From Schmidtea nova (lineage: Eukaryota), in the NCBI GenBank assembly GCA_044892505.1, contig CM097882.1, forward strand, positions 348,068,001-348,132,000: a stretch of DNA of 64,000 bases, written 5' to 3'. This document shows positions 1 to 19,420 of this stretch, in pieces (the stretch's first letter is position 1; each line of letters opens with the position of its first letter). Below the pieces are notes generated by a model. The model was not told the origin of the DNA, searched no databases, and saw nothing but the letters and a program-made list of their open reading frames with translations. A program made the translations under genes and the position numbers.

Positions 1-2682
1 ATGTAAATTGCTAGCTTTTCTGTACAATAAAATCCTAAAATTAGACATTATTCCTACAAGTTGGAAATCATTTAAAACGATACTAATCCCCAAACCAGAT
101 AAAAATGGCCAATATCATAAAATATATTCTTGGCGACCAATTGCCTTATTATCTGTCATTTACAAAGTCTTCGCTTCAGTTTTGGCAAATCGTCTAAGCT
201 TATGGATAAGAAATAATTCCATGTTACACATTGGCCAAAAGGGTGGTTCGGAGTACGAAGGATGTATTGAACACAACTCTATTCTTTCTGCTATCGTCGA
301 ACATTCAAAATACAGCAAGTCTTCACCTTTAACGATAGCTTGGCTAGACATCAAAGATGCCTTCGGAAGTGTTCCACATGACTACATGTGGACACTGTTA
401 AAACACATAAATTTTAGTGATAGGTTTGTAGGAATTTTAAAACTGCTCTATACTGATACAAGCTCGTTTTATTGTTGCAATAAAATGCAGACACCGGATA
501 TTCCAATAAAGAAAGGAGTTAAACAAGGTTGTCCGATCTCAATGATATTGTTTGCAATAGCTATTAACCCAGTACTTGAGTCTATTAACCTATCAAACGT
601 TAATCCTTTTACGATTGGAACGTCTCCGGTACAGGTGTTGGCTTATGCGGATGATATCGCACTTATCGCGACAAATACCTCTGATCTGCAAATACTCATA
701 AACGTTGCTGTAAACACCGCTAAAACAATTGGATTTGAATATCGTCCAGAAAAGTGCGCTTATATGCAATACCCTAAATCAGAAACTGTAAGCGAGATTT
801 CTGTCAACAACGTTCTTATCAAAAAGATTGCAACAAATGAATTTTACCAATACTTGGGAGTACCAATAGGTGACAATAATGATCAAAGTCCCTATGAAAT
901 TCTAAGCAAAGTAATTGAAGACACAAAGAAAATAGCAAATTCTGATCTTTACGGCTGGCAAAAACTTAAAGCGTATAAGGTCTTTCTGCATTCTCGCTTG
1001 ATTTTTCCATTTAGAACTAGGGAAATCAAAACAAGTTCTTTAGCTGATTCGAGTAAAAATTCAAAATTAAATGTAAATAATACGAGTATTTTGAGGAGTC
1101 ATCTTAGAAAAATATTGCACTTGCCACACTACTCTGAGATTAGCTATTTTTATAATTCTACTGAAAACGGCGGTGCAGGCTGCATAGACTTACTTGACGA
1201 GTATCATACACAGACAATCGTGTACTTTTTCCGCTTGTTAACATCAACGTGCGAATATTCGAAAAAGATAAATACTGACTCGCTTTTATTTGTCACAAGT
1301 CCGAGACTCGGAATCAAAAATCCAGTTCTTAAACAAAGTTTAGAATGGATAAATGGAAAAGAGAGCAAGAAAAACAACAGTGGTTGCAAAACTCGATTTT
1401 ATCGATTGCGATCATCCAATGCTTACTTTTCTAAAGTTCACAACATTAAATTGTTATTTGAAACAGTGAAAGGGAATCCTTCTATTCGGATAACCACTAC
1501 ACTTAAGGGAACACGTATATTATTACCAACATTAAGAAAAGCATTGTCAATGATTTTACATTCAGCTCTCCAGGATTCGTATCTCGAGAAATGGGAGAAT
1601 AGCAATCATAATAATCTGCTTGTATCTGCGATTAAACTCTGTCCACTTGTCAACAAGCTTATTTTCCGCAGTGATTTGACAGAATTTGAATGGAGATTCG
1701 TCCATCGAGCAAGAACGAATACATTATCAATATTTGCGAAGCCATATAAAACTGGCGAAAATCGTCTTTGTCGTAGATGTAAGCTTGGAGACGAGACTTT
1801 ATCACACGTTCTTCAAACTTGTAAAATGAACAAATCTTTGGCAACTTGTCGACATAACGCTTGCTTAGAAAAAATAAAAAGCGAGTTGAAAGATCCAAAC
1901 TTGTTAGTTGTTGCGGATCATAAATGTTCCCTAGTACCGACATCAACTGAACGCGTTGAATTAATAATAACCAATAATGATAAAAAGACCATATTATTGG
2001 TAGACATGAAATGCCCAATCGATTCGGTGCCCAACTTTGACTTGGCTGATAAAAAAAACATAGAAAAGTATGATAAACTAAAATCAGAAATTAAAATAGC
2101 CAAACCCGATTATAAAGTTGAGTTGTTTACCTGCATCATAGGCTCATTAGGATCCATTGAAATTAAAACACCTGATCTTTTAGTAAAAATGGGCGTAAAA
2201 GAAAATAAAGTAAAGCGTCTGATGAAAGAGTGTGCAATTAGCAATATTGCACACTCGGCCAAAATTTGGTACTTTCATACCAATGACTTTCTTCCAGATA
2301 ATATAAGACAAACTTGTAAATAAATAATTATATATATATATATATATATATTTGCTTTTTAAACTCTGTAAATAAAAATTAAAGTAAATATTTTGTAAAG
2401 TAATTTTTGTTTTAAATATCCAATCTTTTTATTCTGATAAATTGTCTTTGAGAGTTATTAAATTGGGAGACCAAGTATTCTGCGACGTATGTCATTTATT
2501 CTAGACTTATCAACTTCAAAAGAATACAGTCGCAAAGCTGGATGACGAAATCCAAAGAACCAGAAACTTCCATTCAGATTGAACAATTATATTTTGACTG
2601 TGATTGTTAAGGGACTAATCCATGTCGATTAGATAATCTGTAAAAAAAATATGTCAAACTTGTTATATTTAATAAATGTTTA
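1..2682 (+). mobile_element. RLE non-LTR retrotransposon copy E1 (3' part; cut by window start)
   Basis: RT-CCHC-RLE coding end plus 359-bp 3' UTR ending ...AATAAATGTTTA, joined to tRNA nt 19 (TTATCAC) at 2683. Confidence 0.95.
2..2323 (+). CDS. E1 ORF2, C-terminal part: reverse transcriptase, CCHC zinc knuckle, restriction-like endonuclease (5' partial)
   Basis: WRPIALL, LDIKDAFGSVPH, GVKQGCP, YADD, YLG, CRRC-x8-H-x4-C, RHN, DMK, KY, GSLG motifs. Frame is open from the window edge. Confidence 0.95.
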   Translation, partial: CKLLAFLYNKILKLDIIPTSWKSFKTILIPKPDKNGQYHKIYSWRPIALLSVIYKVFASVLANRLSLWIRNNSMLHIGQKGGSEYEGCIEHNSILSAIVEHSKYSKSSPLTIAWLDIKDAFGSVPHDYMWTLLKHINFSDRFVGILKLLYTDTSSFYCCNKMQTPDIPIKKGVKQGCPISMILFAIAINPVLESINLSNVNPFTIGTSPVQVLAYADDIALIATNTSDLQILINVAVNTAKTIGFEYRPEKCAYMQYPKSETVSEISVNNVLIKKIATNEFYQYLGVPIGDNNDQSPYEILSKVIEDTKKIANSDLYGWQKLKAYKVFLHSRLIFPFRTREIKTSSLADSSKNSKLNVNNTSILRSHLRKILHLPHYSEISYFYNSTENGGAGCIDLLDEYHTQTIVYFFRLLTSTCEYSKKINTDSLLFVTSPRLGIKNPVLKQSLEWINGKESKKNNSGCKTRFYRLRSSNAYFSKVHNIKLLFETVKGNPSIRITTTLKGTRILLPTLRKALSMILHSALQDSYLEKWENSNHNNLLVSAIKLCPLVNKLIFRSDLTEFEWRFVHRARTNTLSIFAKPYKTGENRLCRRCKLGDETLSHVLQTCKMNKSLATCRHNACLEKIKSELKDPNLLVVADHKCSLVPTSTERVELIITNNDKKTILLVDMKCPIDSVPNFDLADKKNIEKYDKLKSEIKIAKPDYKVELFTCIIGSLGSIEIKTPDLLVKMGVKENKVKRLMKECAISNIAHSAKIWYFHTNDFLPDNIRQTCK

Positions 2683-3034: not shown

Positions 3035-3043
3035 GGTTCGATG
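3035..3043 (+). pseudogene. 5' stub (nt 1-9, GGTTCGATG) of tRNA-Val interrupted by E2
   Basis: Spacer B end TTCTTTCAA + GGTTCGATG, then element sequence ACTCAATC. Confidence 0.9.
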
Positions 3044-5674
3044 ACTCAATCACCTGCTGCTCAGTCAACTGCTGCTGATGTAATGACTCAGTCTATTGCA
3101 AATCAGTCAACTGTGACGAAGCAATATGAATTAGAAAACATTCTCAAATATCAAATTTCCAGTTTGCAATGTTTTCAATCGATTTTAGATTATTTTTCTC
3201 AACTAAATGGTGGAAATCTCGCTACTGCCTCAGTTCTATCTGATGCGAATGCAAGTCAACGGAGTTCTTTCGATCAAGGATCTAAAATTTCTCCAAACCA
3301 ATCTGATAATATGCCACTTTCTTATGCTGATATTGAGACTAAATTCACTAAATCAAAGGATTTACTTATTGTCAAGCGCCTGGATTCATTGGAGTCTCAA
3401 TTTATGAATATGGCTGAAAAGTTAGATTATTTGGTTTCTTTGTTTAATGGCTCTGTTGATGATTTATCAGATTTTCCTAAAGTAAATGAAAATAATTTAA
3501 ATAATAATCCTTTCAATAAAAATAAAGTTTTTGATATCAAAGATAAATTAATTGTAAATAATGTAGTTTTAGATAAATCAAATATTTCAGAATTTATTGA
3601 AAATAATATTGCTAAAATTCCTAATAGTTTAATTGATGTAAATAATAAAATGTGTAATTCAAATAATAAATTTCTAAATAACCCTAATAAAGAGAATGTT
3701 AAACATTTTAATAATCCCAAAGATACATCTTCAATTGATTTGACTAACGATAAAATTATGCCAAATGAAAACATAGAAATAATTATTAAAAATAATAAAA
3801 AATCTGTTAAAATTATAGAACTTTATAAAACAACTAAACAGAAGTATGATAAATTTGAATTTAAAAGTCTGGTTCGTATTTTAACGAAAAGGGAACGCCA
3901 GAAAATCTTGAATGCCTTCCCTGCTTTAATACAACTAATTAAAAAGAAAGAATCACAGAGTAAATATTTTGAAATTAATAAATTTCTTTCGAGCAAAGAT
4001 TTTAATGTGAATCACTTGAATTTAATTAATTTTGATTATTTTTTCTATAGAAATTGTAATCTTTGTGTATCTTTAAAATTGAACAACGCTCCTGTCATTT
4101 CATCAGCACCAAAACCTGTTGTTTTAAAAACTATTAAATTAATTGACCATAATATCGTCAAAATAAATTCTGAAATCCCTGACTTTGTTCGAGCTCCAAT
4201 GTCAATTCGAAGATTTTTATTCAATCTTTCGCACGATCTTTCAAACACTGTTTCCATCAAGGATGAGAAACACAGGGGAAATAAAATAAATAACATTCTT
4301 ACTTCAATGAAACATAAACAACAATTACCAGATTATTTAATAAAATCAAACATTAAATACGAAAATGGTGAGTTCTTATTATTAGATTTGACTAACGATA
4401 AAATCAAATTGAACGACGATAATAACTTGATAAAATCAAATTTTTCTGAACTTACTAGAAGTCAGATTAAAAATCTTTACCATTCTTATCCTTCTCTTAA
4501 GGAAGTTTGTTTCGTTGAAAATCTTGAAACAAGATCATCATCCGTTAGTAAAATTATCGAATCTTTAAAGTTAATTAATGAATTTCCAAAAAATATCATT
4601 TTTAAAGAGGGTAAATTTTATCAGTCTGATAAAAGAACAATCTCACCTAGTAGTTCTCCTGACATAATGTTCAACCTTGGTCTTTTTAATTTAGCTAGTA
4701 TGAGTAGAAAAGATTGTGAATTAAAATCCATTTTAGAGAAGACTGGTTGTGACTTTAAAATAGTTGAAATAATATTCTACCTCAACTATTTAGGCTTGAC
4801 TCAATCTTTAGAATTTTGCAAAAATCAAACTTATTCTGATTATGTGAGGAATTACGTCTGCAATTGCTGCTTGATAAACTCACTCTGTAGTATTGCTGAT
4901 GTTGATTCGCTTTCATCTGAAGATTTTGAGGGTTGGGCGACCGAAATTGTTCAGAAAATCCCAGTTTCTTCCTATTACTTCAATAGCTGCCAGGAAAAGC
5001 TTTTAAAGCTGAAGCAATGGGACATTTCAACTAAAATCAAAAGAATCCATAACGTTATTTCACCTGAAATAATATCTTATTTAAATAACTTTCTTGACTC
5101 TGTAGACGTAAAATTTCCATCTAAGTCTCAACAACATAATATTCTAATTAAATTAATGAAAGCTATCAATGACATTAAAATTTTTGATGACATACACGGA
5201 AATAAAGCAAAAAGACTTGTTTACTTTTTGCTAAGAGATGCCAAGAAATATTTGAATAAAAATCAACGATTCAGATTATTTGAATCGAGCAATAAATATT
5301 GCACTTTAGAGATGGAGAATATAATTTCAGTAATAATTGAGAACCTTACCAAAGTTACTGACCATGAAGTTACTACTCCTGAAATCACAGTTGAAGAAAC
5401 GCCAATTGAAATAACTTGTGATCCTGAACCTATCGTCTTGATTAAGGAAATAAACTGTTTAAAATGCAACAATATCATCGAAAAATGCATTCTTGTTAGA
5501 GATGGAACAAACGTCAACATCTGTGAAAGCTGTCTATTTGACGCAATTACCTTTGAAAAGCCGATTCCTGAAGCTACTAATTCGGATATCGAAGAAAATA
5601 TAGAAACAAATTGTAAGAAATCTTGTCCAAGACCTAGAAAAACAGACAAGAAAACATCAACCAAAGCAAAATGA
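3041..5674 (+). CDS. E2 ORF1, 877 aa, Asn/Lys-rich, C-terminal C-x2-C-x18-C-x2-C zinc finger; function unknown
   Basis: Long ORF kept open in all 7 copies; no family recognisable by eye. Confidence 0.85.
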   Translation: MTQSPAAQSTAADVMTQSIANQSTVTKQYELENILKYQISSLQCFQSILDYFSQLNGGNLATASVLSDANASQRSSFDQGSKISPNQSDNMPLSYADIETKFTKSKDLLIVKRLDSLESQFMNMAEKLDYLVSLFNGSVDDLSDFPKVNENNLNNNPFNKNKVFDIKDKLIVNNVVLDKSNISEFIENNIAKIPNSLIDVNNKMCNSNNKFLNNPNKENVKHFNNPKDTSSIDLTNDKIMPNENIEIIIKNNKKSVKIIELYKTTKQKYDKFEFKSLVRILTKRERQKILNAFPALIQLIKKKESQSKYFEINKFLSSKDFNVNHLNLINFDYFFYRNCNLCVSLKLNNAPVISSAPKPVVLKTIKLIDHNIVKINSEIPDFVRAPMSIRRFLFNLSHDLSNTVSIKDEKHRGNKINNILTSMKHKQQLPDYLIKSNIKYENGEFLLLDLTNDKIKLNDDNNLIKSNFSELTRSQIKNLYHSYPSLKEVCFVENLETRSSSVSKIIESLKLINEFPKNIIFKEGKFYQSDKRTISPSSSPDIMFNLGLFNLASMSRKDCELKSILEKTGCDFKIVEIIFYLNYLGLTQSLEFCKNQTYSDYVRNYVCNCCLINSLCSIADVDSLSSEDFEGWATEIVQKIPVSSYYFNSCQEKLLKLKQWDISTKIKRIHNVISPEIISYLNNFLDSVDVKFPSKSQQHNILIKLMKAINDIKIFDDIHGNKAKRLVYFLLRDAKKYLNKNQRFRLFESSNKYCTLEMENIISVIIENLTKVTDHEVTTPEITVEETPIEITCDPEPIVLIKEINCLKCNNIIEKCILVRDGTNVNICESCLFDAITFEKPIPEATNSDIEENIETNCKKSCPRPRKTDKKTSTKAK

Positions 5675-8600
5675 AGATGTGTGCCTGCATCAGCTCAATC
5701 GTCTGCCATTCCCTCTAATGAGACTGATGCAGAGAGCACAACTAAAAATAATATTTCAACTATCGACAATCGTGATCCTGAAGTGTGGTTTTCTGATAAT
5801 GATATTGATTGGTATCTTGAAAACCACATTGATAATCCAATGCATGGATATATTAAATGCTTTATAGTAAATATCATCTGTTCTAACATCACAGAAGATA
5901 TTGTTGAAATTCCACCATCTATTAGCAATGCTGAAATTGTATTTTGTCCACTCAACATTAACAATTCGCACTGGATTCTTTTTGTTTATAGTAAGAAAAT
6001 GTTATCTTCTTACTTTATTGACCCAATCCTTGCAAACAGACAAAAGCCAATCAATAAACAAATGGCTCAGAGAATTAATCTAAAACTGAATAGATTTTTT
6101 AATCTAAATATATCTGTGTCCCGACATCCACACAAACATCTTGAATATCAGAATAACAGCTTTGACTGTGGCCCATTTACGTGTGCTTATGCTGTGATTA
6201 TCAGTAAAGATTTGAACAGCTTTCCAAATGGGTTCATAGAGAAAATTCGTACCAGTGTGCATGAAAATCAAAATCGTATGCAAATAACCGAATCCACCTT
6301 ATTCGCTGGTACTAACTCCAAGATGGACATGACCAAAATAAATATCAAGAAAGCCCTTGCAAAAAAGAAAGTCATCACCAACACCTCAGATATGACCAAA
6401 GTATTGAACACTCAAAAACCGTGTGTGTCATCAATAATTAGTAAATATTACGAAAGTAATTCTAAAATAACAGTCTTATCTGCCGAACTAACTTTAAACC
6501 TAATTGCACAAAATACCTCCTTCATAGCTGATAATGTCACTTTCAAGCAGTTCAAAGGAATCGATCATGTTATAAGTATCATTCCTAAATTTAACGATTG
6601 GTGTCTCTTTGTCTATTCGAATAAACTTGACAGGAGCTACATGTTCGACTTCAATTATCGAAACATTGATGAAAGGCTAATTGAAATTGGTGAAAAGATA
6701 ACTGAATATCTGAATCAATTCACTCTTGTTTCTAAAATAAAATTCACACCTCATCATAGAATTTCTCATCCAACATTTCATTCTTACGATGATCAATATT
6801 TTGCAAGTTCTTTTATTGTATTTTTTGAGAAACTTGTCTTTGAAAGAATACTGGACAATGATAAGGTTTATGACTCATTAAGTGCTCTAAAATATCAGTC
6901 TTGTAAAGATCTTTCTCCTAGCCTAAGTTTCATTAATGGTAAAATATCCGACAAAATTATTGAGGAATATTTTGCTAGCCTAAACTTATCGACCAAATAT
7001 ATTCTTCTAAACACAACAATGTGTACTGCGCTTTCAGATGATTGCACTGAATACTTGAAAGACTTTGTAAACATTGAGTGCATGATGAAGGCTACTATAA
7101 TCTTTGTAATCATTTCTCCTCCAAGAGCCAACGACTTGCTCATGGTTATTGATTACGACGCTGATGAGCACTATTTATTAAGCCCAGTCACTAATGACTT
7201 GTTCGTTATGACTGAAGGATTCTGCTATAAATTACTAATTAAAATTAATGAGATTAGAGAGAGCACAGGACGTTCCTTGAAATCGCGTAATTGTCGACAT
7301 GACGTTAAAGGTTCTGGCTTATTTAGTAGGTTATTAATCTGTGCCTTTATTAAATATTATGCATTTGACCGATCTCTAGAAAATATCAATCTTCATGAAA
7401 TTGGCAAAATTATCTACTCACTTGTGCCATTGGTTGATAAAAATGATAATGCTGAGGAAGAAAGACGACTAAAATCAAAAGCTGTAAACTCTTTAAAACT
7501 AAATTTAAAACAGCGAATAGAAAAAGCCAATAATCTTATAATTTCACTTGAACACGCCAGTATTGATGAAATCATAAGTGGCATTCTTTCAAATATTCCT
7601 CGTCTTAAAGATTTGAACACCGATCACATTCGTACACCATATTTAGGTACTAAAATAGAAAAAGCTAGAAAATTCAAAAATTCCACTGAGTTTCTGTCAA
7701 ACATGAAAAAGACTGTGTATAGGATTTTGGGTAACAACACAGAATCAATTGCACCTCCTTATCAGGAAATTATTGACACTTTCAGTCATCCTGATACATT
7801 ACCTAGAAATTGGGAAAACATCTTAAAATTCACTAAGAGTTCTAAATATAGTCTTGAATTAAATCCAATGACACCTAAAGAAATCCTTTCAAGTCTTTGC
7901 AAAGCTGACAACACTTCTCCAGGTCTTGATAATGTTTGTTATAAAGATCTTTTGTTATTAGACCCTGAATGTAAATTGCTAGCTTTTCTGTACAATAAAA
8001 TCCTAAAATTAGACATTATTCCTACAAGTTGGAAATCATTTAAAACGATACTAATCCCCAAACCAGATAAAAATGGCCAATATCATAAAATATATTCTTG
8101 GCGACCAATTGCCTTATTATCTGTCATTTACAAAGTCTTCGCTTCAGTTTTGGCAAATCGTCTAAGCTTATGGATAAGAAATAATTCCATGTTACACATT
8201 GGCCAAAAGGGTGGTTCGGAGTACGAAGGATGTATTGAACACAACTCTATTCTTTCTGCTATCGTCGAACATTCAAAATACAGCAAGTCTTCACCTTTAA
8301 CGATAGCTTGGCTAGACATCAAAGATGCCTTCGGAAGTGTTCCACATGACTACATGTGGACACTGTTAAAACACATAAATGTTAGTGATAGGTTTGTAGG
8401 AATTTTAAAACTGCTCTATACTGATACAAGCTCGTTTTACTGTTGCAATAAAATGCAGACACCGGATATTCCAATAAAGAAAGGAGTTAAACAAGGTTGT
8501 CCGATCTCAATGATATTGTTTGCAATAGCTATTAACCCAGTACTTGAGTCTATTAATCTATCAAACGTTAATCCTTTTACGATTGGAACATCTCCGGTAC

Positions 8601-10644
8601 AGGTGTTGGCTTATGCGGATGATATCGCACTTATCGCGACAAATACCTCTGATCTGCAAATACTCATAAACGTTGCTGTAAACACCGCTAAAACAATTGG
8701 ATTTGAATATCGTCCAGAAAAGTGCGCTTATATGCAATTCCCTAAAATAGAAACTGTAAGCGAGATTTCTGTCAACAACGTTCTTATCAAAAAGATTGCA
8801 ACAAATGAATTTTACCAATACTTGGGAGTACCAATAGGTGACAATAATGATCAAAGTCCCTATGAAATTCTAAGCAAAGTAATTGAAGACACAAAGAAAA
8901 TAGCAAATTCTGATCTTTACGGCTGGCAAAAACTTAAAGCGTATAAGGTCTTTCTGCATTCTCGCTTGATTTTTCCATTTAGAACTAGGGAAATCAAAAC
9001 AAGTTCTTTAGCTGATTCGAGTAAAAATTCAAAATTAAATGTAAATAATACGAGTATTTTGAGGAGTCATCTTAGAAAAATATTGCACTTGCCACACTAC
9101 TCTGAGATTAGCTATTTTTATAATTCTACTGAAAACGGCGGTGCAGGCTGCATAGACTTACTTGACGAGTATCATACACAGACAATCGTGTACTTTTTCC
9201 GTTTGTTAACATCAACGTGCGAATATTCGAAAAAGATAAATACTGACTCGCTTTTATTTGTCACAAGTCCGAGACTCGGAATCAAAAATCCAGTTCTTAA
9301 ACAAAGTTTAGAATGGATAAATGGAAAAGAGAGCAAGAAAAACAACAGTGGTTGCAAAACTCGATTTTATCGGTTGCGATCATCCATTGCTTACTTTTCT
9401 AAAGTTCACAACATTAAATTGTTATTTGAAACAGTGAAAGGGAATCCTTCTATCCGTATAACCACTACACTTAAGGGAACACGTATATTATTACCAACAT
9501 TAAGAAAAGCCTTGTCAATGATTTTACATTCAGCTCTCCAGGATTCGTATCTCGAGAAATGGGAGAATAGCAATCATAATAATCTGCTTGTATCTGCGAT
9601 AAAACTCTGTCCACTTGTCAACAAGCTTATTTTCCGCAGTGATTTGACAGAATTTGAATGGAGATTCGTCCATCGAGCAAGAACGAATACATTATCAATA
9701 TTTGCGAAGCCATATAAAACTGGCGAAAATCGTCTTTGTCGTAGATGTAAGCTTGAAGACGAGACTTTATCACACGTTCTTCAAACTTGTAAAATGAACA
9801 AATCTTTGGCAACTAGTCGACATAACGCTTGCTTAGAAAAAATAAAAAGCGAGTTGAAAGATCCAAACTTGTTAGTTGTTGCGGATCATAAATGTTCCCT
9901 AGTACCGACATCAACTGAACGCGTTGATTTAATAATAACCAATAATGATAAAAAGACCATATTATTGGTAGACATGAAATGCCCAATCGATTCGGTGCCC
10001 AACTTTGACTTGGCTGATAAAAAAAACATAGAAAAGTATGATAAACTAAAATCAGAAATTAAAATAGCCAAACCCGATTATAAAGTTGAGTTGTTTACCT
10101 GCATCATAGGCTCATTAGGATCCATTGAAATTAAAACACCTGATCTTTTAGTAAAAATGGGAGTAAAAGAAAATAAAGTAAAACGTCTGATGAAAGAGTG
10201 TGCAATTAGCAATATTGCGCACTCGGCCAAAATTTGGTACTTTCATACCAATGGCTTTCTTCCAGATAATATAAGACAAACTTGTAAATAAATAATTATA
10301 TATATATAAATATTTGCTTTTTAAACTCTGTAAATAAAATTTAAAGTAAATATTTTGTAAAGTAATTTTTGTTTTAAATATCAAATCTTTTTAATCTGAT
10401 AAATTGTCTTTGAGAGTTATTAAATTGGGAGACCAAGTATTCTGCGACGTATGTCACTTATTCTAGACTTATCAACTTCAAAATAATACAGTCGCAAAGC
10501 TGGATGACGAAATCCAAAGAACCAGAAACTTCCATTCAGATTGAACAATTATATTTTGACTGTGATTGTTTAGGCACTAATCCATGTTGATTAGATAATC
10601 TGTAAAAAAAATATGTCAAACTTGTTATATTTAATAAATGTTTA
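3044..10644 (+). mobile_element. RLE non-LTR retrotransposon copy E2 (7601 bp)
   Basis: ORF1 + ORF2 + 353-bp 3' UTR between tRNA nt 9 and nt 19. Confidence 0.96.
5681..10291 (+). CDS. E2 ORF2: Ulp1-like protease(s) - RT - CCHC - RLE (start uncertain; GTG is only the ORF-finder call)
   Basis: HW97-98/D114/QNNSFDCG163 Ulp1 triad; PGLDN, AFGSVPH, QGCP, YADD; CRRC..H..C; RHN; RVD..DMK..KY RLE. Confidence 0.95.
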   Translation: MPASAQSSAIPSNETDAESTTKNNISTIDNRDPEVWFSDNDIDWYLENHIDNPMHGYIKCFIVNIICSNITEDIVEIPPSISNAEIVFCPLNINNSHWILFVYSKKMLSSYFIDPILANRQKPINKQMAQRINLKLNRFFNLNISVSRHPHKHLEYQNNSFDCGPFTCAYAVIISKDLNSFPNGFIEKIRTSVHENQNRMQITESTLFAGTNSKMDMTKINIKKALAKKKVITNTSDMTKVLNTQKPCVSSIISKYYESNSKITVLSAELTLNLIAQNTSFIADNVTFKQFKGIDHVISIIPKFNDWCLFVYSNKLDRSYMFDFNYRNIDERLIEIGEKITEYLNQFTLVSKIKFTPHHRISHPTFHSYDDQYFASSFIVFFEKLVFERILDNDKVYDSLSALKYQSCKDLSPSLSFINGKISDKIIEEYFASLNLSTKYILLNTTMCTALSDDCTEYLKDFVNIECMMKATIIFVIISPPRANDLLMVIDYDADEHYLLSPVTNDLFVMTEGFCYKLLIKINEIRESTGRSLKSRNCRHDVKGSGLFSRLLICAFIKYYAFDRSLENINLHEIGKIIYSLVPLVDKNDNAEEERRLKSKAVNSLKLNLKQRIEKANNLIISLEHASIDEIISGILSNIPRLKDLNTDHIRTPYLGTKIEKARKFKNSTEFLSNMKKTVYRILGNNTESIAPPYQEIIDTFSHPDTLPRNWENILKFTKSSKYSLELNPMTPKEILSSLCKADNTSPGLDNVCYKDLLLLDPECKLLAFLYNKILKLDIIPTSWKSFKTILIPKPDKNGQYHKIYSWRPIALLSVIYKVFASVLANRLSLWIRNNSMLHIGQKGGSEYEGCIEHNSILSAIVEHSKYSKSSPLTIAWLDIKDAFGSVPHDYMWTLLKHINVSDRFVGILKLLYTDTSSFYCCNKMQTPDIPIKKGVKQGCPISMILFAIAINPVLESINLSNVNPFTIGTSPVQVLAYADDIALIATNTSDLQILINVAVNTAKTIGFEYRPEKCAYMQFPKIETVSEISVNNVLIKKIATNEFYQYLGVPIGDNNDQSPYEILSKVIEDTKKIANSDLYGWQKLKAYKVFLHSRLIFPFRTREIKTSSLADSSKNSKLNVNNTSILRSHLRKILHLPHYSEISYFYNSTENGGAGCIDLLDEYHTQTIVYFFRLLTSTCEYSKKINTDSLLFVTSPRLGIKNPVLKQSLEWINGKESKKNNSGCKTRFYRLRSSIAYFSKVHNIKLLFETVKGNPSIRITTTLKGTRILLPTLRKALSMILHSALQDSYLEKWENSNHNNLLVSAIKLCPLVNKLIFRSDLTEFEWRFVHRARTNTLSIFAKPYKTGENRLCRRCKLEDETLSHVLQTCKMNKSLATSRHNACLEKIKSELKDPNLLVVADHKCSLVPTSTERVDLIITNNDKKTILLVDMKCPIDSVPNFDLADKKNIEKYDKLKSEIKIAKPDYKVELFTCIIGSLGSIEIKTPDLLVKMGVKENKVKRLMKECAISNIAHSAKIWYFHTNGFLPDNIRQTCK

Positions 10645-10699
10645 TTATCACGTCTGCTTTACACGCAGAAGGTCCCCGGTTCGATCCCGGGTCGAACCA
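10645..10699 (+). pseudogene. 3' part of tRNA-Val(TAC) interrupted by E2
   Basis: tRNA nt 19-73, loop TT-TAC-AC, followed by spacer A. Confidence 0.95.
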
Positions 10700-10845: not shown

Positions 10846-10918
10846 GGTTCGATGGTGTAGCGGTTATCACGTCTGCTTCACACGCAGAAGGTCCCCGGTT
10901 CGATCCCGGGTCGAACCA
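10846..10918 (+). tRNA. tRNA-Val: tRNA-Val(CAC)
   Basis: Cloverleaf: acceptor GGTTCGA/TCGAACC, anticodon stem TCTGC/GCAGA, loop TT-CAC-AC, T arm CCCGG-TTCGATC-CCGGG, discriminator A; A and B boxes intact. Confidence 0.97.
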
Positions 10919-10920
10919 TA

Positions 10921-10924
10921 TTTT
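10921..10924 (+). terminator. Pol III oligo(T) terminator, T4 at start of spacer B (representative)
   Basis: A73-TA-TTTT after every gene followed by spacer B. Confidence 0.6.
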
Positions 10925-11167
10925 ATTAATTAGAAACTTCCTAATCTTGATTTTTTCTCAATGGAACACCTTTCTCATATATGTTACAATATTAAAAATG
11001 ATTGAATAATTAGAGAAAAAAGTTAAAATTTCATTTTCATAAATGTAGTGTGTGAAAGCTTTCTATCCTTTTGCAATTTTATGATTATTTTGTGCAGTGT
11101 TGTTTATTTAAATATGTAACTGTTGAAAAAAAGAATATTGGATATGAAAATGGATAAAGTATTGCAA

Positions 11168-11175
11168 GTTCGATG
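11168..11175 (+). pseudogene. 5' stub (nt 2-9) of tRNA-Val interrupted by E3; 49-bp upstream deletion
   Basis: ATTGCAA-GTTCGATG-ACTC; distance to the preceding gene is 49 bp shorter than in other copies. Confidence 0.88.
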
Positions 11176-13806
11176 ACTCAATCACCTGCTGCTCAGTCAA
11201 CTGCTGCTGATGTGATGACTCAGTCTATTGGAAATCAGTCAACTGTGACGAAGAAATATGAATTAGAAAACATTCTCAAGTATCAAATTTCCAGTTTGCA
11301 ATGTTTTCAATCGATTTTGGATTATTTTTCGCAACTAAATGGTGGAAATCTCGCTACTGCCTCAGTTCTTTCTGATGCGAATGCAAGTCAACGGAGTTCT
11401 TTCGATCAAGGATCTAAAATTTCTCAAAACCAATCTGATAATATGCCACTTTCTTATGCTGATATTGAGACTAAATTCACTAAATCAAAGGATTTACTGA
11501 TTGTCAAGCGCCTGGATTCATTGGAGTCTCAATTTATGAATATGGCTGAAAAGTTAGATTATTTGGTTTCTTTTTTTAATGGCTCTGTTGATGATTTATC
11601 AGATTTTCCTAAAGTAAATGAAAATAATTTAAATAATAATCCTTTCAATAAAAATAAAGTTTTTGATATCAAAGATAAATTAATTGTAAATAATGTAGTT
11701 TTAGATAAATCAAATATTTCAGAATTTATTGAAAATAATATTGCTAAAATTCCTAATAGTTTAATTGATGTAAATAATAAAATGTGTAATTCAAATAATA
11801 AATTTCTAAATAACCCTAATAAAGAGAATGTTAAACATTTTAATAATCCCAAAGAAACATCTTCAATTGATTTGACTAACGATAAAATTATGCCAAATGA
11901 AAACATAGAAATAATTATTAAAAATAATAAAAAATCTGTTAAAATTATAGAACCTAATAAAACAACTAAACAGAAGTATGATAAATTTGAATTTAAAAAT
12001 CTGGTTCGTATTTTAACGAAAAGGGAACGCCAGAAAATCTTGAATGCCTTCCCTGCTTTAATACAACTAATTAAAAAGAAAGAATCACAGAGTAAATATT
12101 TTGAAATTAATAAATTTCTTTCGAGCAAAGATTTTAATGTGAATCACTTGAATTTAAATAATTTTGATTATTTTTTCTATAGAAATTGTAATCTTTGTGT
12201 ATCTTTAAAATTGAACAACGCTCCTGTCATTTTATCAGCACCAAAACCTGTTGTTTTAAAAACTATTAAATTAATTGACCATAATATCGTCAAAATAAAT
12301 TCTGAAATCCCTGACTTTGTTCGAGCTCCAATGTCAATTCGAAGATTTTTATTCAATCTTTCGCACGATCTTTCAAACACTGTTTCCATCAAGGATGAGA
12401 AACACAGGGGAAATAAAATAAATAACATTCTTACTTCAATGAAACATAAACAACAATTACCAGATTATTTAATAAAATCAAACATTAAATACGAAAATGG
12501 TGAGTTCTTATTATTAGATTTGACTAACGATAAAATCAAATTGAACGACGATAATAACTTGATAAAATCAAATTTTTCTGAACTTACTAGAAGTCAGATT
12601 AAAAATCTTTACTATTCTTATCCTTCTCTTAAGGAAGTTTGTTTCGTTGAAAATCTTGAAACAAGATCATCATCCGTTAGTAAAATTATCGAATCTTTAA
12701 AGTTAATTAATGAATTTCCAAAAAATATCATTTTTAAAGAGGGTAAATTTTATCAGTCTGATAAAAGAACAATCTCACCTAGTAGTTCTCCTGACATAAT
12801 GTTCAACCTTGGTCTTTTTAATTTGGCTAGTATGAGTAGAAAAGATTGTGAATTAAAATCCATTTTAGAGAAGACTGGTTGTGACTTTAAAATAGTTGAA
12901 ATAATATTCTACCTCAACTATTTAGGCTTGACTCAATCTTTAGAATTTTGCAAAAATCAAACTTATTCTGATTATGTGAGGAATTACGTCTGTAATTGCT
13001 GCTTGATAAACTCACTCTGTAGTATTGCTGATGTTGATTCGCTTTCATCTGAAGATTTTGAGGGTTGGGCGACCGAAATTGTTCAGAAAATCCCAGTTTC
13101 TTCCTATTACTTCAATAGCTGCCAGGAAAAGCTTTTAAAGCTGAAGCAATGGGACATTTCAACTAAAATCAAAAGAATCCATAACGTTATTTCACCTGAA
13201 ATAATATCTTATTTAAATAACTTTCTTGACTCTGTAGACGTAAAATTTCCATCTAAGTCTCAACAACATAATATTCTAATTAAATTAATGAAAGCTATCA
13301 ATGACATTAAAATTTTTGATGACATACACGGAAATAAAGCAAAAAGACTTGTTTACTTTTTGCTAAGAGATGCCAAGAAATATTTGAATAAAAATCAACG
13401 ATTCAGATTATTTGAATCGAGCAATAAATATTGCACTTCAGAGATGGAGAATATAATTTCAGTAATAATTGAGAACCTTACCAAAGTTACTGACCATGAA
13501 GTTACTACTCCTGAAATCACAGTTGAAGAAACGCCAATTGAAATAACTTGTGATCCTGAACCTATCGTCTTGATTAAGGAAATAAACTGTTTAAAATGTA
13601 ACAATATCATCGAAAAATGCATTCTTGTTAGAGATGGAACAAACGTCAACATCTGTGAAAGCTGTCTATTTGACGCAATTACCTCTGAAAAGCCGATTCC
13701 TGAAGCTACTAATTCGGATACCGAAGAAAATATGGAAACAAATAGTAAGAAATCTTGTCCAAGACCTAGAAAAACAGACAAGAAAACATCAACCAAAGCG
13801 AAATGA
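11173..13806 (+). CDS. E3 ORF1 (877 aa)
   Basis: Near-identical to E2 ORF1. Confidence 0.85.
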   Translation: MTQSPAAQSTAADVMTQSIGNQSTVTKKYELENILKYQISSLQCFQSILDYFSQLNGGNLATASVLSDANASQRSSFDQGSKISQNQSDNMPLSYADIETKFTKSKDLLIVKRLDSLESQFMNMAEKLDYLVSFFNGSVDDLSDFPKVNENNLNNNPFNKNKVFDIKDKLIVNNVVLDKSNISEFIENNIAKIPNSLIDVNNKMCNSNNKFLNNPNKENVKHFNNPKETSSIDLTNDKIMPNENIEIIIKNNKKSVKIIEPNKTTKQKYDKFEFKNLVRILTKRERQKILNAFPALIQLIKKKESQSKYFEINKFLSSKDFNVNHLNLNNFDYFFYRNCNLCVSLKLNNAPVILSAPKPVVLKTIKLIDHNIVKINSEIPDFVRAPMSIRRFLFNLSHDLSNTVSIKDEKHRGNKINNILTSMKHKQQLPDYLIKSNIKYENGEFLLLDLTNDKIKLNDDNNLIKSNFSELTRSQIKNLYYSYPSLKEVCFVENLETRSSSVSKIIESLKLINEFPKNIIFKEGKFYQSDKRTISPSSSPDIMFNLGLFNLASMSRKDCELKSILEKTGCDFKIVEIIFYLNYLGLTQSLEFCKNQTYSDYVRNYVCNCCLINSLCSIADVDSLSSEDFEGWATEIVQKIPVSSYYFNSCQEKLLKLKQWDISTKIKRIHNVISPEIISYLNNFLDSVDVKFPSKSQQHNILIKLMKAINDIKIFDDIHGNKAKRLVYFLLRDAKKYLNKNQRFRLFESSNKYCTSEMENIISVIIENLTKVTDHEVTTPEITVEETPIEITCDPEPIVLIKEINCLKCNNIIEKCILVRDGTNVNICESCLFDAITSEKPIPEATNSDTEENMETNSKKSCPRPRKTDKKTSTKAK

Positions 13807-16800
13807 AGATGTGTGCCTGCATCAGCTCAATCGTCTGCCATTCCCTCTAATGAGACTGATGCAGAGAGCACAACTAAAAATAATATTTCAACTATCGACA
13901 ATCGTGATCCTGAAGTGTGGTTTTCTGATAATGATATTGATTGGTATCTTGAAAACCACATTGATAATCCAATGCATGGATATATTAAATGCTTTATAGT
14001 AAATATCATCTGTTCTAACATCACAGAAGATATTGTTGAAATTCCACCATCTATTAGCAATGCTGAAATTGTATTTTGTCCACTCAACATTAACAATTCG
14101 CACTGGATTCTTTTTGTTTATAGTAAGAAAATGTTATCTTCTTACTTTATTGACCCAATCCTTGCAAACAGACAAAAGCCAATCAATAAACAAATGGCTC
14201 AGAGAATTAACCTAAAACTGAATAGATTTTTTAATCTAAATATATCTGTGTCCCGACATCCACACAAACATCTTGAATATCAAAATAACAGCTTTGATTG
14301 TGGCCCATTTACGTGTGCTTATGCTGTGATTATCAGTAAAGATTTGAACAGCTTTCCAAATGGGTTCATAGAGAAAATTCGTACCAGTGTGCATGAAAAT
14401 CAAAATCGTATGCAAATAACCGAATCCACCTTATTCGCTGGTACTAACTCCAAGATGGACATGACCAAAATAAATATCAAGAAAGCCCTTGCAAAAAAGA
14501 AAGTCATCACCAACACCTCAGATATGACCAAAGTATTGAACACTCAAAAACCGTGTGTGTCATCAATAATTAGTAAATATTACGAAAGTAATTCTAAAAT
14601 AACAGTCTTATCTGCCGAACTAACTTTAAACCTAATTGCACAAAATACCTCCTTCATAGCTGATAATGTCACTTTCAAGCAGTTCAAAGGAATCGATCAT
14701 GTTATAAGTATCATTCCTAAATTTAACGATTGGTGTCTCTTTGTCTATTCGAATAAACTTGACAGGAGCTACATGTTCGACTTCAATTATCGAAACATTG
14801 ATGAAAGGCTAATTGAAATTGGTGAAAAGATAACTGAATATCTGAATCAATTCACTCTTGTTTCTAAAATAAAATTCACACCTCATCATAGAATTTCTCA
14901 TCCAACATTTCATTCTTACGATGATCAATATTTTGCAAGTTCTTTTATTGTATTTTTTGAGAAACTTGTCTTTGAAAGAATACTGGACAATGATAAGGTT
15001 TATGACTCATTAAGTGCTCTAAAATATCAGTCTTGTAAAGATCTTTCTCCTAGCCTAAGTTTCATTAATGGTAAAATATCCGACAAAATTATTGAGGAAT
15101 ATTTTGCTAGCCTAAACTTATCGACCAAATATATTCTTCTAAACACAACAATGTGTACTGCGCTTTCAGATGATTGCACTGAATACTTGAAAGACTTTGT
15201 AAACATTGAGTGCATGATGAAGGCTACTATAATCTTTGTAATCATTTCTCCTCCAAGAGCCAACGACTTGCTCATGGTTATTGATTACGACGCTGATGAG
15301 CACTATTTATTAAGCCCAGTCACTAATGACTTGTTCGTTATGACTGAAGGATTCTGCTATAAATTACTAATTAAAATTAATGAGATTAGAGAGAGCACAG
15401 GACGTTCCTTGAAATCGCGTAATTGTCGACATGACGTTAAAGGTTCTGGCTTATTTAGTAGGTTATTAATCTGTGCCTTTATTAAATATTATGCATTTGA
15501 CCGATCTCTAGAAAATATCAATCTTCATGAAATTGGCAAAATTATCTACTCACTTGTGCCATTAGTTGATAAAAATGATAATGCTGAGGAAGAAAGACGA
15601 CTAAAATCAAAAGCTGTAAACTCTTTAAAACTAAATTTAAAACAGCGAATAGAAAAAGCCAATAATCTTATAATTTCACTTGAACACGCCAGTATTGATG
15701 AAATCATAAGTGGCATTCTTTCAAATATTCCTCGTCTTAAAGATTTGAACACCGATCACATTCGTACACCATATTTAGGTACTAAAATAGAAAAAGCTAG
15801 AAAATTCAAAAATTCCACTGAATTTCTGTCAAACATGAAAAAGACTGTGTATAGGATTTTGGGTAATAACACAGAATCAATTGCACCTCCTTTTCAGGAA
15901 ATTATTGACACTTTCAGTCATCCTGATACATTACCTAGAAATTGGGAAAACATCTTAAAATTTACAAAAACTTCTAAAACTAGTCTTGAATTAAATCCAA
16001 TGACACCTAAAGAAATCATGTCAAGTCTTGGCAAAGCTGACAACACTTCTCCAGGTCTTGATAATGTCTGTTATAAAGATCTTTTGCTATTAGACCCTGA
16101 ATGTAAATTGTTAACTTTTCTATACAATAAAATCCTAAAATTAGATATTATTCCCACAAGTTGGAAATCATTTAAAACCATACTGATTCCAAAACCAGAT
16201 AAAAATGGCCAATATCATAAAATATCTTCTTGGCGACCAATTGCCTTATTATCTGTCATTTACAAAGTCTTCGCTTCAGTTTTGGCAAATCGTCTAAGCT
16301 TATGGATAAGAAATAATTCCATGTTACACATTGGCCAAAAGGGTGGTTCGGAGTACGAAGGATGTATTGAACACAACTCTATTCTTTCTGCTATCGTCGA
16401 ACATTCAAAATACAGCAAGTCTTTACCTTTAACGATAGCTTGGCTAGACATCAAAGATGCCTTAGGAAGTGTTCCACATGACTACATGTGGACACTGTTA
16501 AAACACATAAATGTTAGTGATAGGTTTGTAGGAATTTTAAAACTGCTCTATACTGATACAAGCTCGTTTTATTGTTGCAATAAAATGCAAACACCGGATA
16601 TTCCAATAAAGAAAGGAGTTAAACAAGGTTGTCCGATCTCAATGATATTGTTTGCAATAGCTATTAACCCAGTACTTGAGTCTATTAATCTATCAAACGT
16701 TAATCCTTTTACGATTGGAACATCTCCGGTACAGGTGTTGGCTTATGCGGATGATATCGCACTTATCGCGACAAATACCTCTGATCTGCAAATACTCATA

Positions 16801-19347: not shown

Positions 19348-19420
19348 GGTTCGATGGTGTAGCGGTTATCACGTCTGCTTCACACGCAGAAGGTCCCCGG
19401 TTCGATCCCGGGTCGAACCA
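19348..19420 (+). tRNA. tRNA-Val: tRNA-Val(CAC), unusually followed by spacer A
   Basis: Identical cloverleaf; 3' flank AATTTTTATTGTAAATTG. Confidence 0.97.

What the first reader, a model, noticed from the sequence alone, without database searches (positions are those of the whole stretch)
3035..10699. RLE non-LTR retrotransposon that inserts specifically inside tRNA-Val genes
Seen: all 7 visible 3' junctions are ...AATAAATGTTTA|TTATCAC (tRNA nt 19) and all 7 visible 5' junctions are (G)GTTCGATG|ACTCAATC. All copies share one orientation and none lies in a spacer. Known: RLE elements are typically specific for multicopy RNA genes (R2 28S rDNA, NeSL SL1, Utopia U2), and NeSL-1 carries a Ulp1-like protease before RT as here. 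Inference: a NeSL/Utopia/R2-related family whose niche is the D-arm of tandem tRNA-Val genes. I do not recognise it as a described family.
Basis: partly seen in the sequence, partly recalled or inferred. Interest (0 to 1): 0.9.

Follow-up and report, generated by a model that had tools for sequence, protein, structure and literature searches.

The report
Retrotransposon that inserts into tRNA-Val genes
A 7.6-kb, fully intact non-LTR retrotransposon with a restriction-like endonuclease sits at exactly the same nucleotide inside eight of 32 tandem tRNA-Val genes; this kind of tRNA-gene-specific element is already known, but this family, its tRNA target and its gene layout appear to be undescribed.

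Summary
The window is a tandem tRNA-Val array of 24 intact genes. It carries 6 full copies (7601-7603 bp) and 2 window-cut copies of one element, all in the tRNA orientation. All 7 visible 5' junctions and all 7 visible 3' junctions are identical to the base. tRNA nt 10-18 (5' D-stem and D-loop) are missing at each insertion.

The element encodes ORF1 (877 aa, no known fold), one in-frame UGA and ORF2 (1536 aa). ORF2 holds three Ulp1-like modules, of which only the first keeps the catalytic residues. These are followed by a reverse transcriptase, a CCHC motif and a restriction-like endonuclease, with R2 proteins as the best solved match. No reading frame is broken in any copy. Differences between copies are mostly synonymous (pN/pS 0.16 in ORF2).

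Relatives from environmental assemblies (35-52% identical over ORF2) also sit in tRNA D-loops: tRNA-Val again, tRNA-Phe, and probably a third tRNA.

tRNA-gene-specific NeSL-related elements are already published (tRNA-Pro, Arg, Glu), so I file this as a new member of a known kind. Two features may be new: a conserved UGA-plus-stem-loop readthrough signal, and retargeting between tRNAs within one clade. Genome-wide specificity, the host and Repbase status could not be tested.

The parts
3035..3043 (+). 5' remnant of the interrupted tRNA-Val gene (nt 1-9). Its last three bases (ATG, 3041-3043) are shared with the element's start codon.
   Evidence: Comparison with the intact gene at 10846-10918.
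3044..10644 (+). Focal full-length element copy: 7601 bp, or 7604 bp if the shared ATG is counted. It has no LTR, no terminal inverted repeat, no poly(A) tail and no target-site duplication.
3041..5674 (+). ORF1, 877 aa, intact, ending in TGA. It has a helical N-terminus, a confidently modelled core at aa 275-780 with no PDB fold match, and a CxxC...CxxC knuckle at aa 806-831 that only part of the clade shares.
3041..3113 (+). Imperfect 31-nt direct duplication of the element's 5' end (3041-3071 and 3083-3113, 77% identical). Each unit begins with an ATG in the ORF1 frame.
5672..5739 (+). Proposed readthrough signal. It is an in-frame UGA (5672-5674), a 6-nt spacer, and a 13-bp stem with a 3-nt bulge (arms 5681-5693 and 5724-5739).
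   Evidence: 98.9% of cells are paired across 7 lineages and 3 pairs show compensatory changes. Slid controls give 11-40% paired. The fold z-score is -3.4.
5675..10291 (+). ORF2 (1536 aa counted from 5681), intact and in the same frame as ORF1. Its first in-frame ATG lies downstream of conserved residues.
5786..6295 (+). Ulp1/SENP-like cysteine protease module 1 (ORF2 aa 36-205). His97, Asp114, Gln157 and Cys163 are invariant in all relatives.
   Evidence: Pfam PF02902, alignments, Foldseek top hits SENP5, SENP2, Ulp1 and NEDP1.
6413..7435 (+). Two further modules with the same predicted secondary-structure pattern (ORF2 aa 245-412 and 420-585). In the window copy they lack the catalytic His and Cys.
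   Evidence: Model secondary structure. hhalign probabilities: d1-d2 69%, d1-d3 84%, d2-d3 93%.
8054..8833 (+). Reverse transcriptase core (ORF2 aa 792-1051; the match to R2 proteins spans aa 684-1162). The YADD motif is invariant.
9737..9979 (+). CCHC zinc motif (aa 1353-1370) and restriction-like endonuclease core with R1414, D1416, D1431 and K1433.
   Evidence: Invariant columns. Alignment to the R2 protein 9nl2.
10292..10644 (+). 3' UTR of 353 nt. It ends in an AATAAA-containing tail that resembles the tails of relatives L001 and L003.
10645..10699 (+). 3' remnant of the interrupted tRNA-Val gene (nt 19-73). In this copy the anticodon is TAC.
1..2682 (+). Copy cut by the left edge of the window. 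Its 3' junction lies in a CAC gene.
11176..18776 (+). Full copy of 7601 bp with both ORFs intact. Its 5' flank carries an extra deletion of about 49 bp. The 3' half of the tRNA is TAC.
19948..27550 (+). Full copy of 7603 bp with both ORFs intact. The 3' half of the tRNA is CAC.
29464..37066 (+). Full copy of 7603 bp with both ORFs intact. The 3' half of the tRNA is TAC. It differs at 4 sites from the copy at 19948.
39573..47175 (+). Full copy of 7603 bp with both ORFs intact. The 3' half of the tRNA is CAC.
49610..57210 (+). Full copy of 7601 bp with both ORFs intact. The 3' half of the tRNA is TAC.
58165..64000 (+). Copy cut by the right edge of the window. ORF1 is intact.
10846..10918 (+). 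An intact tRNA-Val(CAC) gene, which serves as the empty target site. It is one of 24 in the window, identical except at the anticodon (18 CAC, 6 TAC).

Best explanation
This is an autonomous non-LTR retrotransposon of the restriction-like-endonuclease (R2/NeSL-type) group, and it is probably still active. Its target is one position in the D-arm of tRNA-Val genes.

Shown: 8 of the 32 tRNA-Val genes in this tandem array carry a copy in the tRNA orientation. The 3' junction always lies between tRNA nt 18 and 19, and the 5' junction always lies after nt 9. All reading frames are open and under purifying selection.

Inferred from what is established for R2:
1. The C-terminal endonuclease nicks the bottom strand at nt 18/19.
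2. The freed 3' end primes reverse transcription from the 3' UTR of the element RNA.
3. The top strand is cut about 9 bp upstream.
4. The new cDNA end is joined there, possibly helped by the 3-nt ATG microhomology. tRNA nt 10-18 are lost and no target duplication is made.

Insertion removes the A-box region, so the hit gene is dead. The array of identical genes buffers this loss.

Inferred from conserved sequence: the proteins are made like a retroviral gag-pol. Ribosomes usually stop at the UGA that ends ORF1. A conserved stem-loop 6 nt downstream lets a fraction read through and make an ORF1-ORF2 fusion. The one catalytically complete Ulp1-like protease module may then cut that fusion.

Speculative: target choice resides in ORF1 and the N-terminal part of ORF2, because these differ most between the Val-specific and Phe-specific relatives.

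Copies are also shuffled and spread within the array by unequal crossover or gene conversion.
For: Junctions: 7 of 7 exact at each end, against 0.01-0.03 expected by chance. The empty site is defined by 24 intact genes.

Protein domains:
- RVT_1 at 1.8e-29 and Peptidase_C48.
- R2 proteins are the best solved relatives, E 3e-53.
- The C-terminus aligns to the R2 CCHC and RLE region.
- YADD, CCHC and R.D...D.K are invariant in 12 sequences.
- No LTR or terminal inverted repeat.

Activity: all 6 full copies have an intact 877-aa and an intact 1536-aa ORF. Copies are 99.1-99.95% identical. Among 122 variable sites, pN/pS is 0.16 in ORF2 (P = 2e-14) and 0.39 in ORF1 (P = 0.005).

More than one insertion event: copies sit in both CAC and TAC genes and in three downstream unit types, and one copy has a different 5' flank.

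Specificity in relatives:
- L004 (P0008; 35% identical over ORF2, 43% over RT to C-terminus) has its 3' junction in the D-loop of a tRNA-Val-AAC gene, followed by Val AAC, CAC and TAC genes.
- L006 (P0009) sits in the D-loop of a tRNA with a GAA anticodon.
- L001 (P0001; 50% over ORF2, 58% over RT to C-terminus) ends in a D-arm-like string.

Readthrough: an in-frame TGA is present in all 10 lineages examined. In 8 of 10 there is no in-frame ATG before the conserved WFxD motif. The stem-loop is supported by covariation and by a z-score of -3.4.

Protease: the His-Asp-Gln-Cys residues are invariant and the model matches the SENP/Ulp1 fold.

Array dynamics: the haplotypes are mosaic.
Against: - Only one 64-kb window of the genome is available, so copies outside tRNA-Val genes cannot be excluded.
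- The array itself is homogenised (spacer diversity 0.3%) and the copies are recombinant. Part of the copy number may therefore come from array duplication rather than new insertions.
- No transcription start, promoter or 5' ribozyme was found. ORF1's ATG sits at the very first bases of the element, so how the RNA is made and translated is open.
- Readthrough, protease processing, the order of strand cleavage and the location of target recognition are inferences.
- ORF1 has no recognisable fold.
- The RT tree had no curated R2, R4, NeSL, Utopia, HERO, CRE or R5/LIN references.
Confidence: 0.8

Rival explanations
1. The apparent specificity is an illusion of the array. One old insertion, or very few, into a tRNA-Val gene was copied along with its flanks by unequal crossover and gene conversion in the tandem array. 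The identical junctions would then be copies of one event, not repeated targeting.
For: The array is strongly homogenised: twenty 297-bp spacers differ by 0.3% and the short spacers are identical. The element haplotypes are clearly mosaic, which shows recombination between copies. All junctions are identical.
Against: - Copies lie in CAC and TAC genes with three different downstream spacers (297, 146 and 150 bp), and one has a different 5' flank.
- The two most similar copies (4 differences) lie in different unit types.
- Element diversity (up to 0.9%) exceeds spacer diversity and is strongly biased to synonymous sites. That fits lineages selected for function, not passive DNA.
- Independent lineages in other assemblies sit in tRNA-Val and tRNA-Phe D-loops.
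Confidence: 0.1
2. Targeting works by tethering to the RNA polymerase III machinery on tRNA genes (TFIIIC on the A box, or TFIIIB), as in Ty3 or the Dictyostelium TRE elements. On this view the endonuclease does not read the tRNA-Val DNA sequence.
For: Relatives enter different tRNAs within the same D-loop/A-box region, at Sprinzl positions of roughly 14-20. One relative lies just downstream of a 7SL (SRP) RNA gene, another Pol III gene.
Against: - The junctions are exact to the nucleotide in 7 of 7 copies and lie inside the gene.
- The window family is seen only in tRNA-Val, and each relative whose flank is readable sits in a single tRNA type.
- One relative (L003) sits in a satellite of about 183 bp with no recognisable RNA gene.
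- R2-type RLE proteins are known to be sequence-specific.
Confidence: 0.08
3. The element is simply a member of an already catalogued family, for example one of the planarian R5/LIN families or another Repbase NeSL/Utopia entry. Nothing about it would then be new.
For: Kojima and Jurka (PMC4640811) describe NeSL-related LIN families of planaria in tRNA-Arg and tRNA-Glu genes, and NeSL-1_TV in tRNA-Pro. The LIN 3' tails shown there resemble those here in being AT-rich with an AATAA-type motif. The window is AT-rich (about 31% GC), as planarian genomes are (my own knowledge).
Against: - No tRNA-Val-specific family appears in that paper or its supplements, nor in four further literature searches.
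- The LIN junctions lie elsewhere in the tRNA, at about nt 24-26 or near the 5' end, and LIN15 appears to make a long duplication rather than a short deletion.
- The closest proteins in 5.8 billion are 50-52% identical over ORF2 and unnamed.
- Repbase and Dfam could not be searched.
Confidence: 0.2

Closest known systems
NeSL-1 (Caenorhabditis) and Utopia-1_TSP (Trichinella), NeSL clade
   Same: Both are RLE non-LTR retrotransposons specific for a multicopy small-RNA gene. Both carry a Ulp1-like cysteine protease N-terminal to the RT, then a CCHC motif and an RLE at the C-terminus (PMC4640811).
   Different: Their targets are spliced-leader or U2 genes. They are described as encoding one protein with N-terminal zinc fingers. 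Here there are two ORFs joined by a UGA, three Ulp1-like modules and no N-terminal C2H2 finger by Pfam. In my NJ tree this clade does not group with the Caenorhabditis sequences.
LIN15_SM, LIN25_SM (planaria) and NeSL-1_TV (Trichomonas)
   Same: These are NeSL-related RLE elements that insert inside tRNA genes (Arg, Glu, Pro). Their 3' ends are AT-rich and lack a poly(A) tail (PMC4640811 and its S6 Fig).
   Different: They use other tRNAs and other positions in the tRNA. LIN15's 5' and 3' junctions imply a long target duplication, whereas here 9 nt are deleted. Sequence relatedness could not be tested because no reference sequences were available to the tools.
R2 (28S rDNA-specific)
   Same: R2 proteins are the best solved structural relatives (E 3e-53). 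The RT-CCHC-RLE order is the same. Both have an exact target site in a tandem multicopy RNA gene, make a small target deletion, lack a poly(A) tail, and are shuffled by array recombination.
   Different: R2 has a single ORF with N-terminal zinc-finger and Myb DNA-binding domains, targets 28S rDNA, and is co-transcribed and released by a 5' ribozyme (my own knowledge). Here no ribozyme was found, no Myb or ZF was found, and ORF1 and the protease modules are extra.
Dada DNA transposons; Ty3 and Dictyostelium TRE
   Same: They exploit tRNA genes as safe, multicopy landing sites (PMC8869645; the Ty3 and TRE behaviour is from my own knowledge).
   Different: Dada elements are DNA transposons. Ty3 and TRE insert next to tRNA genes, not inside them, by tethering to Pol III factors. 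Their enzymology is unrelated.
Retroviral gag-pol stop-codon readthrough (the murine leukaemia virus type, named from my own knowledge)
   Same: An in-frame stop between a structural ORF and the enzymatic ORF is followed after a short spacer by a conserved RNA structure.
   Different: The element is a non-LTR element, the stop is UGA, and the structure as predicted is a simple bulged stem-loop. Readthrough is not demonstrated.

Membership tests
Non-LTR retrotransposons with restriction-like endonuclease (R2/NeSL/R4/HERO/CRE group) | LINE-type reverse transcriptase | tested here: met
   Pfam RVT_1 at 1.8e-29. R2 and LINE-1 ORF2 proteins are the best PDB hits. YADD is invariant.
Non-LTR retrotransposons with restriction-like endonuclease (R2/NeSL/R4/HERO/CRE group) | CCHC motif and PD-(D/E)XK-type endonuclease C-terminal to the RT, with no AP endonuclease | tested here: met
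   C1353, C1356, H1365 and C1370 are invariant, as are R1414, D1416, D1431 and K1433. The region aligns to that of R2 protein 9nl2. There is no Exo_endo_phos hit.
Non-LTR retrotransposons with restriction-like endonuclease (R2/NeSL/R4/HERO/CRE group) | No terminal repeats; 3' end joined directly to the nicked target | tested here: met
   No LTR or terminal inverted repeat. The 3' junctions are exact in 7 of 7 copies.
NeSL clade (NeSL-1, Utopia, R5/LIN) | Ulp1-like cysteine protease N-terminal to the RT (present in NeSL-1 and Utopia-1_TSP) | tested here: met
   PF02902. The catalytic residues are invariant. The model matches the SENP/Ulp1 fold.
NeSL clade (NeSL-1, Utopia, R5/LIN) | RT phylogeny places the element with NeSL-1, Utopia or R5 | tested here: inconclusive
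   The NJ tree puts the element in a 92-94% supported clade made only of unnamed sequences, apart from the branch holding the Caenorhabditis proteins. No curated NeSL, Utopia, R5, R2, R4, HERO or CRE references were available.
NeSL clade (NeSL-1, Utopia, R5/LIN) | One protein with N-terminal zinc fingers | tested here: not met
   There are two ORFs separated by a UGA. Pfam finds no zinc-finger family in ORF1 or the N-terminal part of ORF2. The only candidate is a CxxC...CxxC knuckle at the end of ORF1, present in part of the clade.
R2 clade | Insertion at the conserved 28S rDNA site; single ORF with N-terminal ZF and Myb | tested here: not met
   The target is tRNA-Val. There are two ORFs and no Myb or ZF by Pfam. 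The bit score to solved R2 proteins (184) is lower than to many unnamed or arthropod and nematode proteins (300-1100).
tRNA-gene-specific NeSL-related families (LIN15_SM, LIN25_SM, NeSL-1_TV) | Copies interrupt one kind of tRNA gene at a fixed position | tested here: met
   8 of 8 copies in the window meet this. Relatives do so in tRNA-Val and tRNA-Phe.
tRNA-gene-specific NeSL-related families (LIN15_SM, LIN25_SM, NeSL-1_TV) | Sequence relatedness to those families | not testable with these tools
Only junction strings are printed in the paper's supplement.
Programmed stop-codon readthrough signals | In-frame stop at a conserved place, conserved downstream RNA structure after a short spacer, and a downstream ORF with no start codon of its own | tested here: met
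   Actual readthrough is not testable here.

The most novel reading that the evidence does not exclude
The window element belongs to an undescribed clade of animal RLE retrotransposons with three distinctive traits. They are expressed gag-pol-style through a structured UGA readthrough signal. They carry a triplicated Ulp1-like module. Their closely related lineages have repeatedly retargeted between different Pol III genes (tRNA-Val, tRNA-Phe, another tRNA, possibly 7SL) while keeping the D-loop as the entry point. Under this reading the fast-evolving ORF1 and N-terminal region is the exchangeable target-recognition module.
Probability: 0.35. Interest if true: 0.75.

Novelty: new member of a known kind. 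Interest (0 to 1): 0.6.

Why it matters
Site-specific retrotransposons that land in multicopy RNA genes are the model for how a mobile element can persist with little harm to its host. R2 relatives are also being studied as tools for placing DNA at defined safe sites.

This window shows an intact family of that type in a target not yet reported for the group: tRNA-Val, at nt 18/19. The empty sites and occupied sites lie side by side. The relatives show that the same protein scaffold has moved between tRNA-Val and tRNA-Phe at only 65% versus about 80% identity in different parts of ORF2. That makes the clade a natural comparison set for asking which part of an RLE retrotransposon reads the target.

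The conserved UGA plus stem-loop also suggests a way of setting the ORF1:ORF2 ratio that, to my knowledge, is unusual for non-LTR elements.

Tried and rejected
- ORF1 word-based homology search: no hits. The full HMMER search found only 18 relatives, all unnamed.
- ORF1 fold search against the PDB: nothing significant.
- Search for a 5' ribozyme or any other Rfam family in the element: none.
- JGI metagenome scan for relatives with flanks: only distant relatives, 25-45% identical over short stretches.
- Exact-pattern scans of viral and prokaryote-genome collections for the junction or tail: none.
- Literature look-up of the sample accessions to identify the host: none found.
- Contigs of six further relatives (L007, L008, L009, L010, L011, L040): they ended before a readable 3' junction or gave no clear one.
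- First attempt at the tree: timed out. I redid it on trimmed RT segments.
- Two malformed paper queries.
- UGA as a sense codon in a variant genetic code: rejected. There is exactly one in-frame TGA in 2417 codons, at a conserved place, and two relatives end ORF2 with TGA.
- The sigma-70 promoter scan is not meaningful for a eukaryote and is not used.

1. tRNA identities in this report rest on ARAGORN and Rfam output.
2. My script printed hhalign result blocks that include the program's own consensus lines for parts of the protease-like modules. Alignment tools also printed consensus lines. I used none of them.


Full report
**1.

ARAGORN finds 24 intact tRNA-Val genes in the window, all on the + strand. 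They are identical except at the anticodon: 18 are CAC and 6 are TAC. The 3' junction string occurs 7 times without a mismatch, against 0.01 expected by chance. The 5' junction string also occurs 7 times, against 0.03 expected.

Comparison with an intact gene (10846-10918) shows what each insertion does:
- tRNA nt 1-9 lie 5' of the element.
- tRNA nt 19-73 lie 3' of it.
- nt 10-18 are lost. These are the 5' strand of the D-stem and most of the D-loop.

There are six full copies of 7601-7603 bp and two copies cut by the window edges, all in the tRNA orientation. Everything between copies is tRNA genes plus spacers. Eight of 32 gene units are therefore occupied, and no copy lies in a spacer.

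**2. What the element encodes**

One reading frame runs from the ATG at 3041 to 10291 and is interrupted by a single TGA at 5672-5674. This gives ORF1 of 877 aa and ORF2 of 1536 aa. All six full copies have both ORFs open, and the right-hand cut copy has ORF1 open. There are no breaks to count.

ORF2 has the following features:
- Pfam finds Peptidase_C48 (Ulp1) and RVT_1.
- Its best solved relatives are R2 retrotransposon proteins (E 3e-53), ahead of LINE-1 ORF2p.
- Its C-terminal 170 residues align to the CCHC and endonuclease region of R2.
- Across 12 family members the YADD box, the CCHC residues and the R.D...D.K endonuclease residues never vary.
- A model of the first 700 residues (pLDDT 72) shows the same secondary-structure pattern three times. 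It matches SENP, Ulp1 and NEDP1 proteases.
- Profile comparison supports the triplication moderately, at 69-93% probability.
- Only the first module keeps the invariant His-Asp-Gln-Cys set.

ORF1 has just 18 detectable relatives among 1.84 billion representative proteins. Its core is confidently modelled at aa 275-780, but it has no structural match in the PDB. The element has no LTRs, inverted terminal repeats, poly(A) tail or target duplication.

**3. Is it active, or just array DNA?**

The copies are 99.1-99.95% identical. The array is itself homogenised, with 0.3% diversity in the 297-bp spacers. The copies are plainly recombinant mosaics. High identity therefore does not prove recent insertion.

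Three things argue against a single amplified insertion:
- Copies lie in both CAC and TAC genes and in three downstream unit types (297-, 146- and 150-bp spacers). One copy has a different 5' flank, and the two most similar copies lie in different unit types.
- The 122 variable sites are strongly biased to synonymous changes. pN/pS is 0.16 in ORF2 (P = 2e-14) and 0.39 in ORF1 (P = 0.005). The lineages have therefore been selected for working proteins.
- Independent relatives show the same behaviour (section 4).

**4. Relatives**

The closest proteins among 5.8 billion are ORF2s from unnamed contigs of environmental or read-set assemblies. They are 33-52% identical to the window ORF2 over its whole length, or 40-59% over the RT-to-C-terminus region that was searched. 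All have the same layout of ORF1, TGA and ORF2. Where a 3' flank is readable:

| Locus (protein) | ORF2 identity to window: whole length / RT to C-terminus | What flanks the element |
|---|---|---|
| L004 (P0008) | 35% / 43% | Abuts a tRNA-Val-AAC gene from about nt 15, followed by intact Val AAC, CAC and TAC genes |
| L006 (P0009) | 35% / 42% | Abuts a tRNA with anticodon GAA (Phe) from about position 17 |
| L001 (P0001) | 50% / 58% | Ends at the contig edge in a D-arm-like string |
| L003 (P0006) | 38% / 45% | Sits in a satellite of about 183 bp |
| L005 (P0007) | 35% / 44% | Lies about 200 bp downstream of the 3' part of a metazoan-type SRP RNA gene |

The clade thus favours Pol III genes, and the tRNA D-loop in particular. 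In L003, ORF1 begins with the same four residues as here, directly at the junction with unrelated DNA. The ATG shared with tRNA nt 7-9 is therefore most likely element sequence, a 3-nt microhomology.

The Val element P0008 and the Phe element P0009 are 65% identical overall. They are about 80% identical in the RT but only 40-50% in the first protease modules and 42% in ORF1. This is the basis for my guess that target choice lies in ORF1 and the N-terminal part of ORF2.

**5. Expression signal**

In all ten lineages examined, ORF1 ends in TGA and ORF2 continues in frame. In eight of the ten, the first in-frame ATG lies beyond a conserved motif of ORF2. Six nucleotides after the TGA begins a 13-bp bulged stem that is conserved at the nucleotide level, although the surrounding protein sequence is not.

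Evidence for the stem:
- Across seven lineages 98.9% of pair cells are standard pairs.
- Three pairs show changes on both sides.
- Sliding the partner columns drops pairing to 11-40%.
- The window sequence folds with z = -3.4.

I read this as programmed UGA readthrough that gives a minor ORF1-ORF2 fusion, which the Ulp1-like module may process. Termination-reinitiation remains an alternative. None of this is shown experimentally.

How the RNA is transcribed is unknown. The insertion removes the A-box region, no ribozyme was detected, and ORF1 starts at the element's first bases.

**6. Comparison with what is known**

Kojima and Jurka 2015 (PMC4640811) already report NeSL-related RLE elements inside tRNA genes: NeSL-1_TV in tRNA-Pro, and the planarian LIN15_SM and LIN25_SM in tRNA-Arg and tRNA-Glu. 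They also report Ulp1-like proteases in NeSL-1 and Utopia-1_TSP. The kind is therefore known.

I found no tRNA-Val-specific family in that paper, in its supplements, or in four other literature searches.

In a neighbour-joining RT tree, the window element falls in a 94%-supported clade of 13 unnamed sequences. That clade sits inside a 92%-supported clade of 22 unnamed sequences, apart from the branch with Caenorhabditis, Plectus and arthropod proteins. Without curated references I cannot say whether this is the R5/LIN group, another NeSL branch or something new. Repbase and Dfam were not available.

**7. Verdict**

The element is a site-specific RLE retrotransposon of tRNA-Val genes, intact and under selection. 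It is a new member of a known kind. Its additional features (readthrough signal, triplicated protease-like modules, an ORF1 of unknown fold, retargeting among tRNAs) would raise it to a new variant if curated comparison confirms that they are undescribed.

Genome-wide specificity and host identity remain open. The host is probably an AT-rich metazoan: the window is about 31% GC, and a relative's contig carries a metazoan-type SRP RNA.

Noticed in passing
window 5672-5739 (and the same place in L001-L007, L009, L040): A single in-frame UGA lies between ORF1 and ORF2. After 6 nt it is followed by a 13-bp bulged stem-loop that is conserved and covaries across lineages whose ORF2s are only 35-52% identical to the window's. 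ORF2 mostly lacks its own ATG. This looks like a gag-pol-style readthrough signal in a non-LTR element.
   Followed up: yes
L005:1-115: The contig of relative P0007 begins with the 3' part (model positions 185-299) of a metazoan-type SRP (7SL) RNA gene, about 200 bp upstream of the element's ORF1. This hints that the host is a metazoan and that this lineage sits beside another Pol III gene.
   Followed up: partly
L003:1-140 and 7518-8223: Relative P0006 is embedded in a tandem repeat of about 183 bp with no Rfam match. About 80 bp of the repeat unit appears on both sides of the element. This is either a long target duplication or a partial-unit deletion.
   Followed up: partly
window 3041-3071 and 3083-3113: The first 31 nt of the element are duplicated imperfectly 42 nt downstream. 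Each unit starts with an ATG in the ORF1 frame. This is possibly a trace of 5'-end formation, or an alternative start codon.
   Followed up: no
window 10919-11175: The spacer upstream of the copy at 11176 is 249 bp instead of 297 bp, and tRNA nt 1 is missing. The deletion of about 49 bp lies between short CAAG repeats. It is the only variant junction.
   Followed up: partly
window, all eight copies (haplotype matrix): Variable sites form blocks shared between different sets of copies. For example, the copy at 11176 shares its 5' part with the copies at 19948 and 29464 and its 3' part with the copy at 49610. This is recombination or gene conversion between copies in the array.
   Followed up: yes
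window 19348-19568: One CAC gene is followed by a short (148-bp) spacer of the kind that otherwise follows TAC genes. It is a hybrid unit and evidence of conversion within the tRNA array.
   Followed up: no
window 6413-7435: Two extra Ulp1-like modules follow the catalytically complete one. The window copy lacks the catalytic His and Cys in both. Their role is unknown; they might act in binding rather than cutting.
   Followed up: partly
L004 versus L006 (ERZ27257134): The same assembly holds at least six distinct lineages of this clade (P0004, P0007, P0008, P0009, P0010, P0012). The tRNA-Val-specific and tRNA-Phe-specific ones are close relatives: about 80% identical in the RT and about 42% in ORF1. 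The two Val-specific lineages (window and L004) are not sisters in the RT tree.
   Followed up: partly
L002:6480-6790: The 3' UTR of relative P0003 contains an internal duplication of about 130 nt. I could not locate its 3' junction.
   Followed up: no
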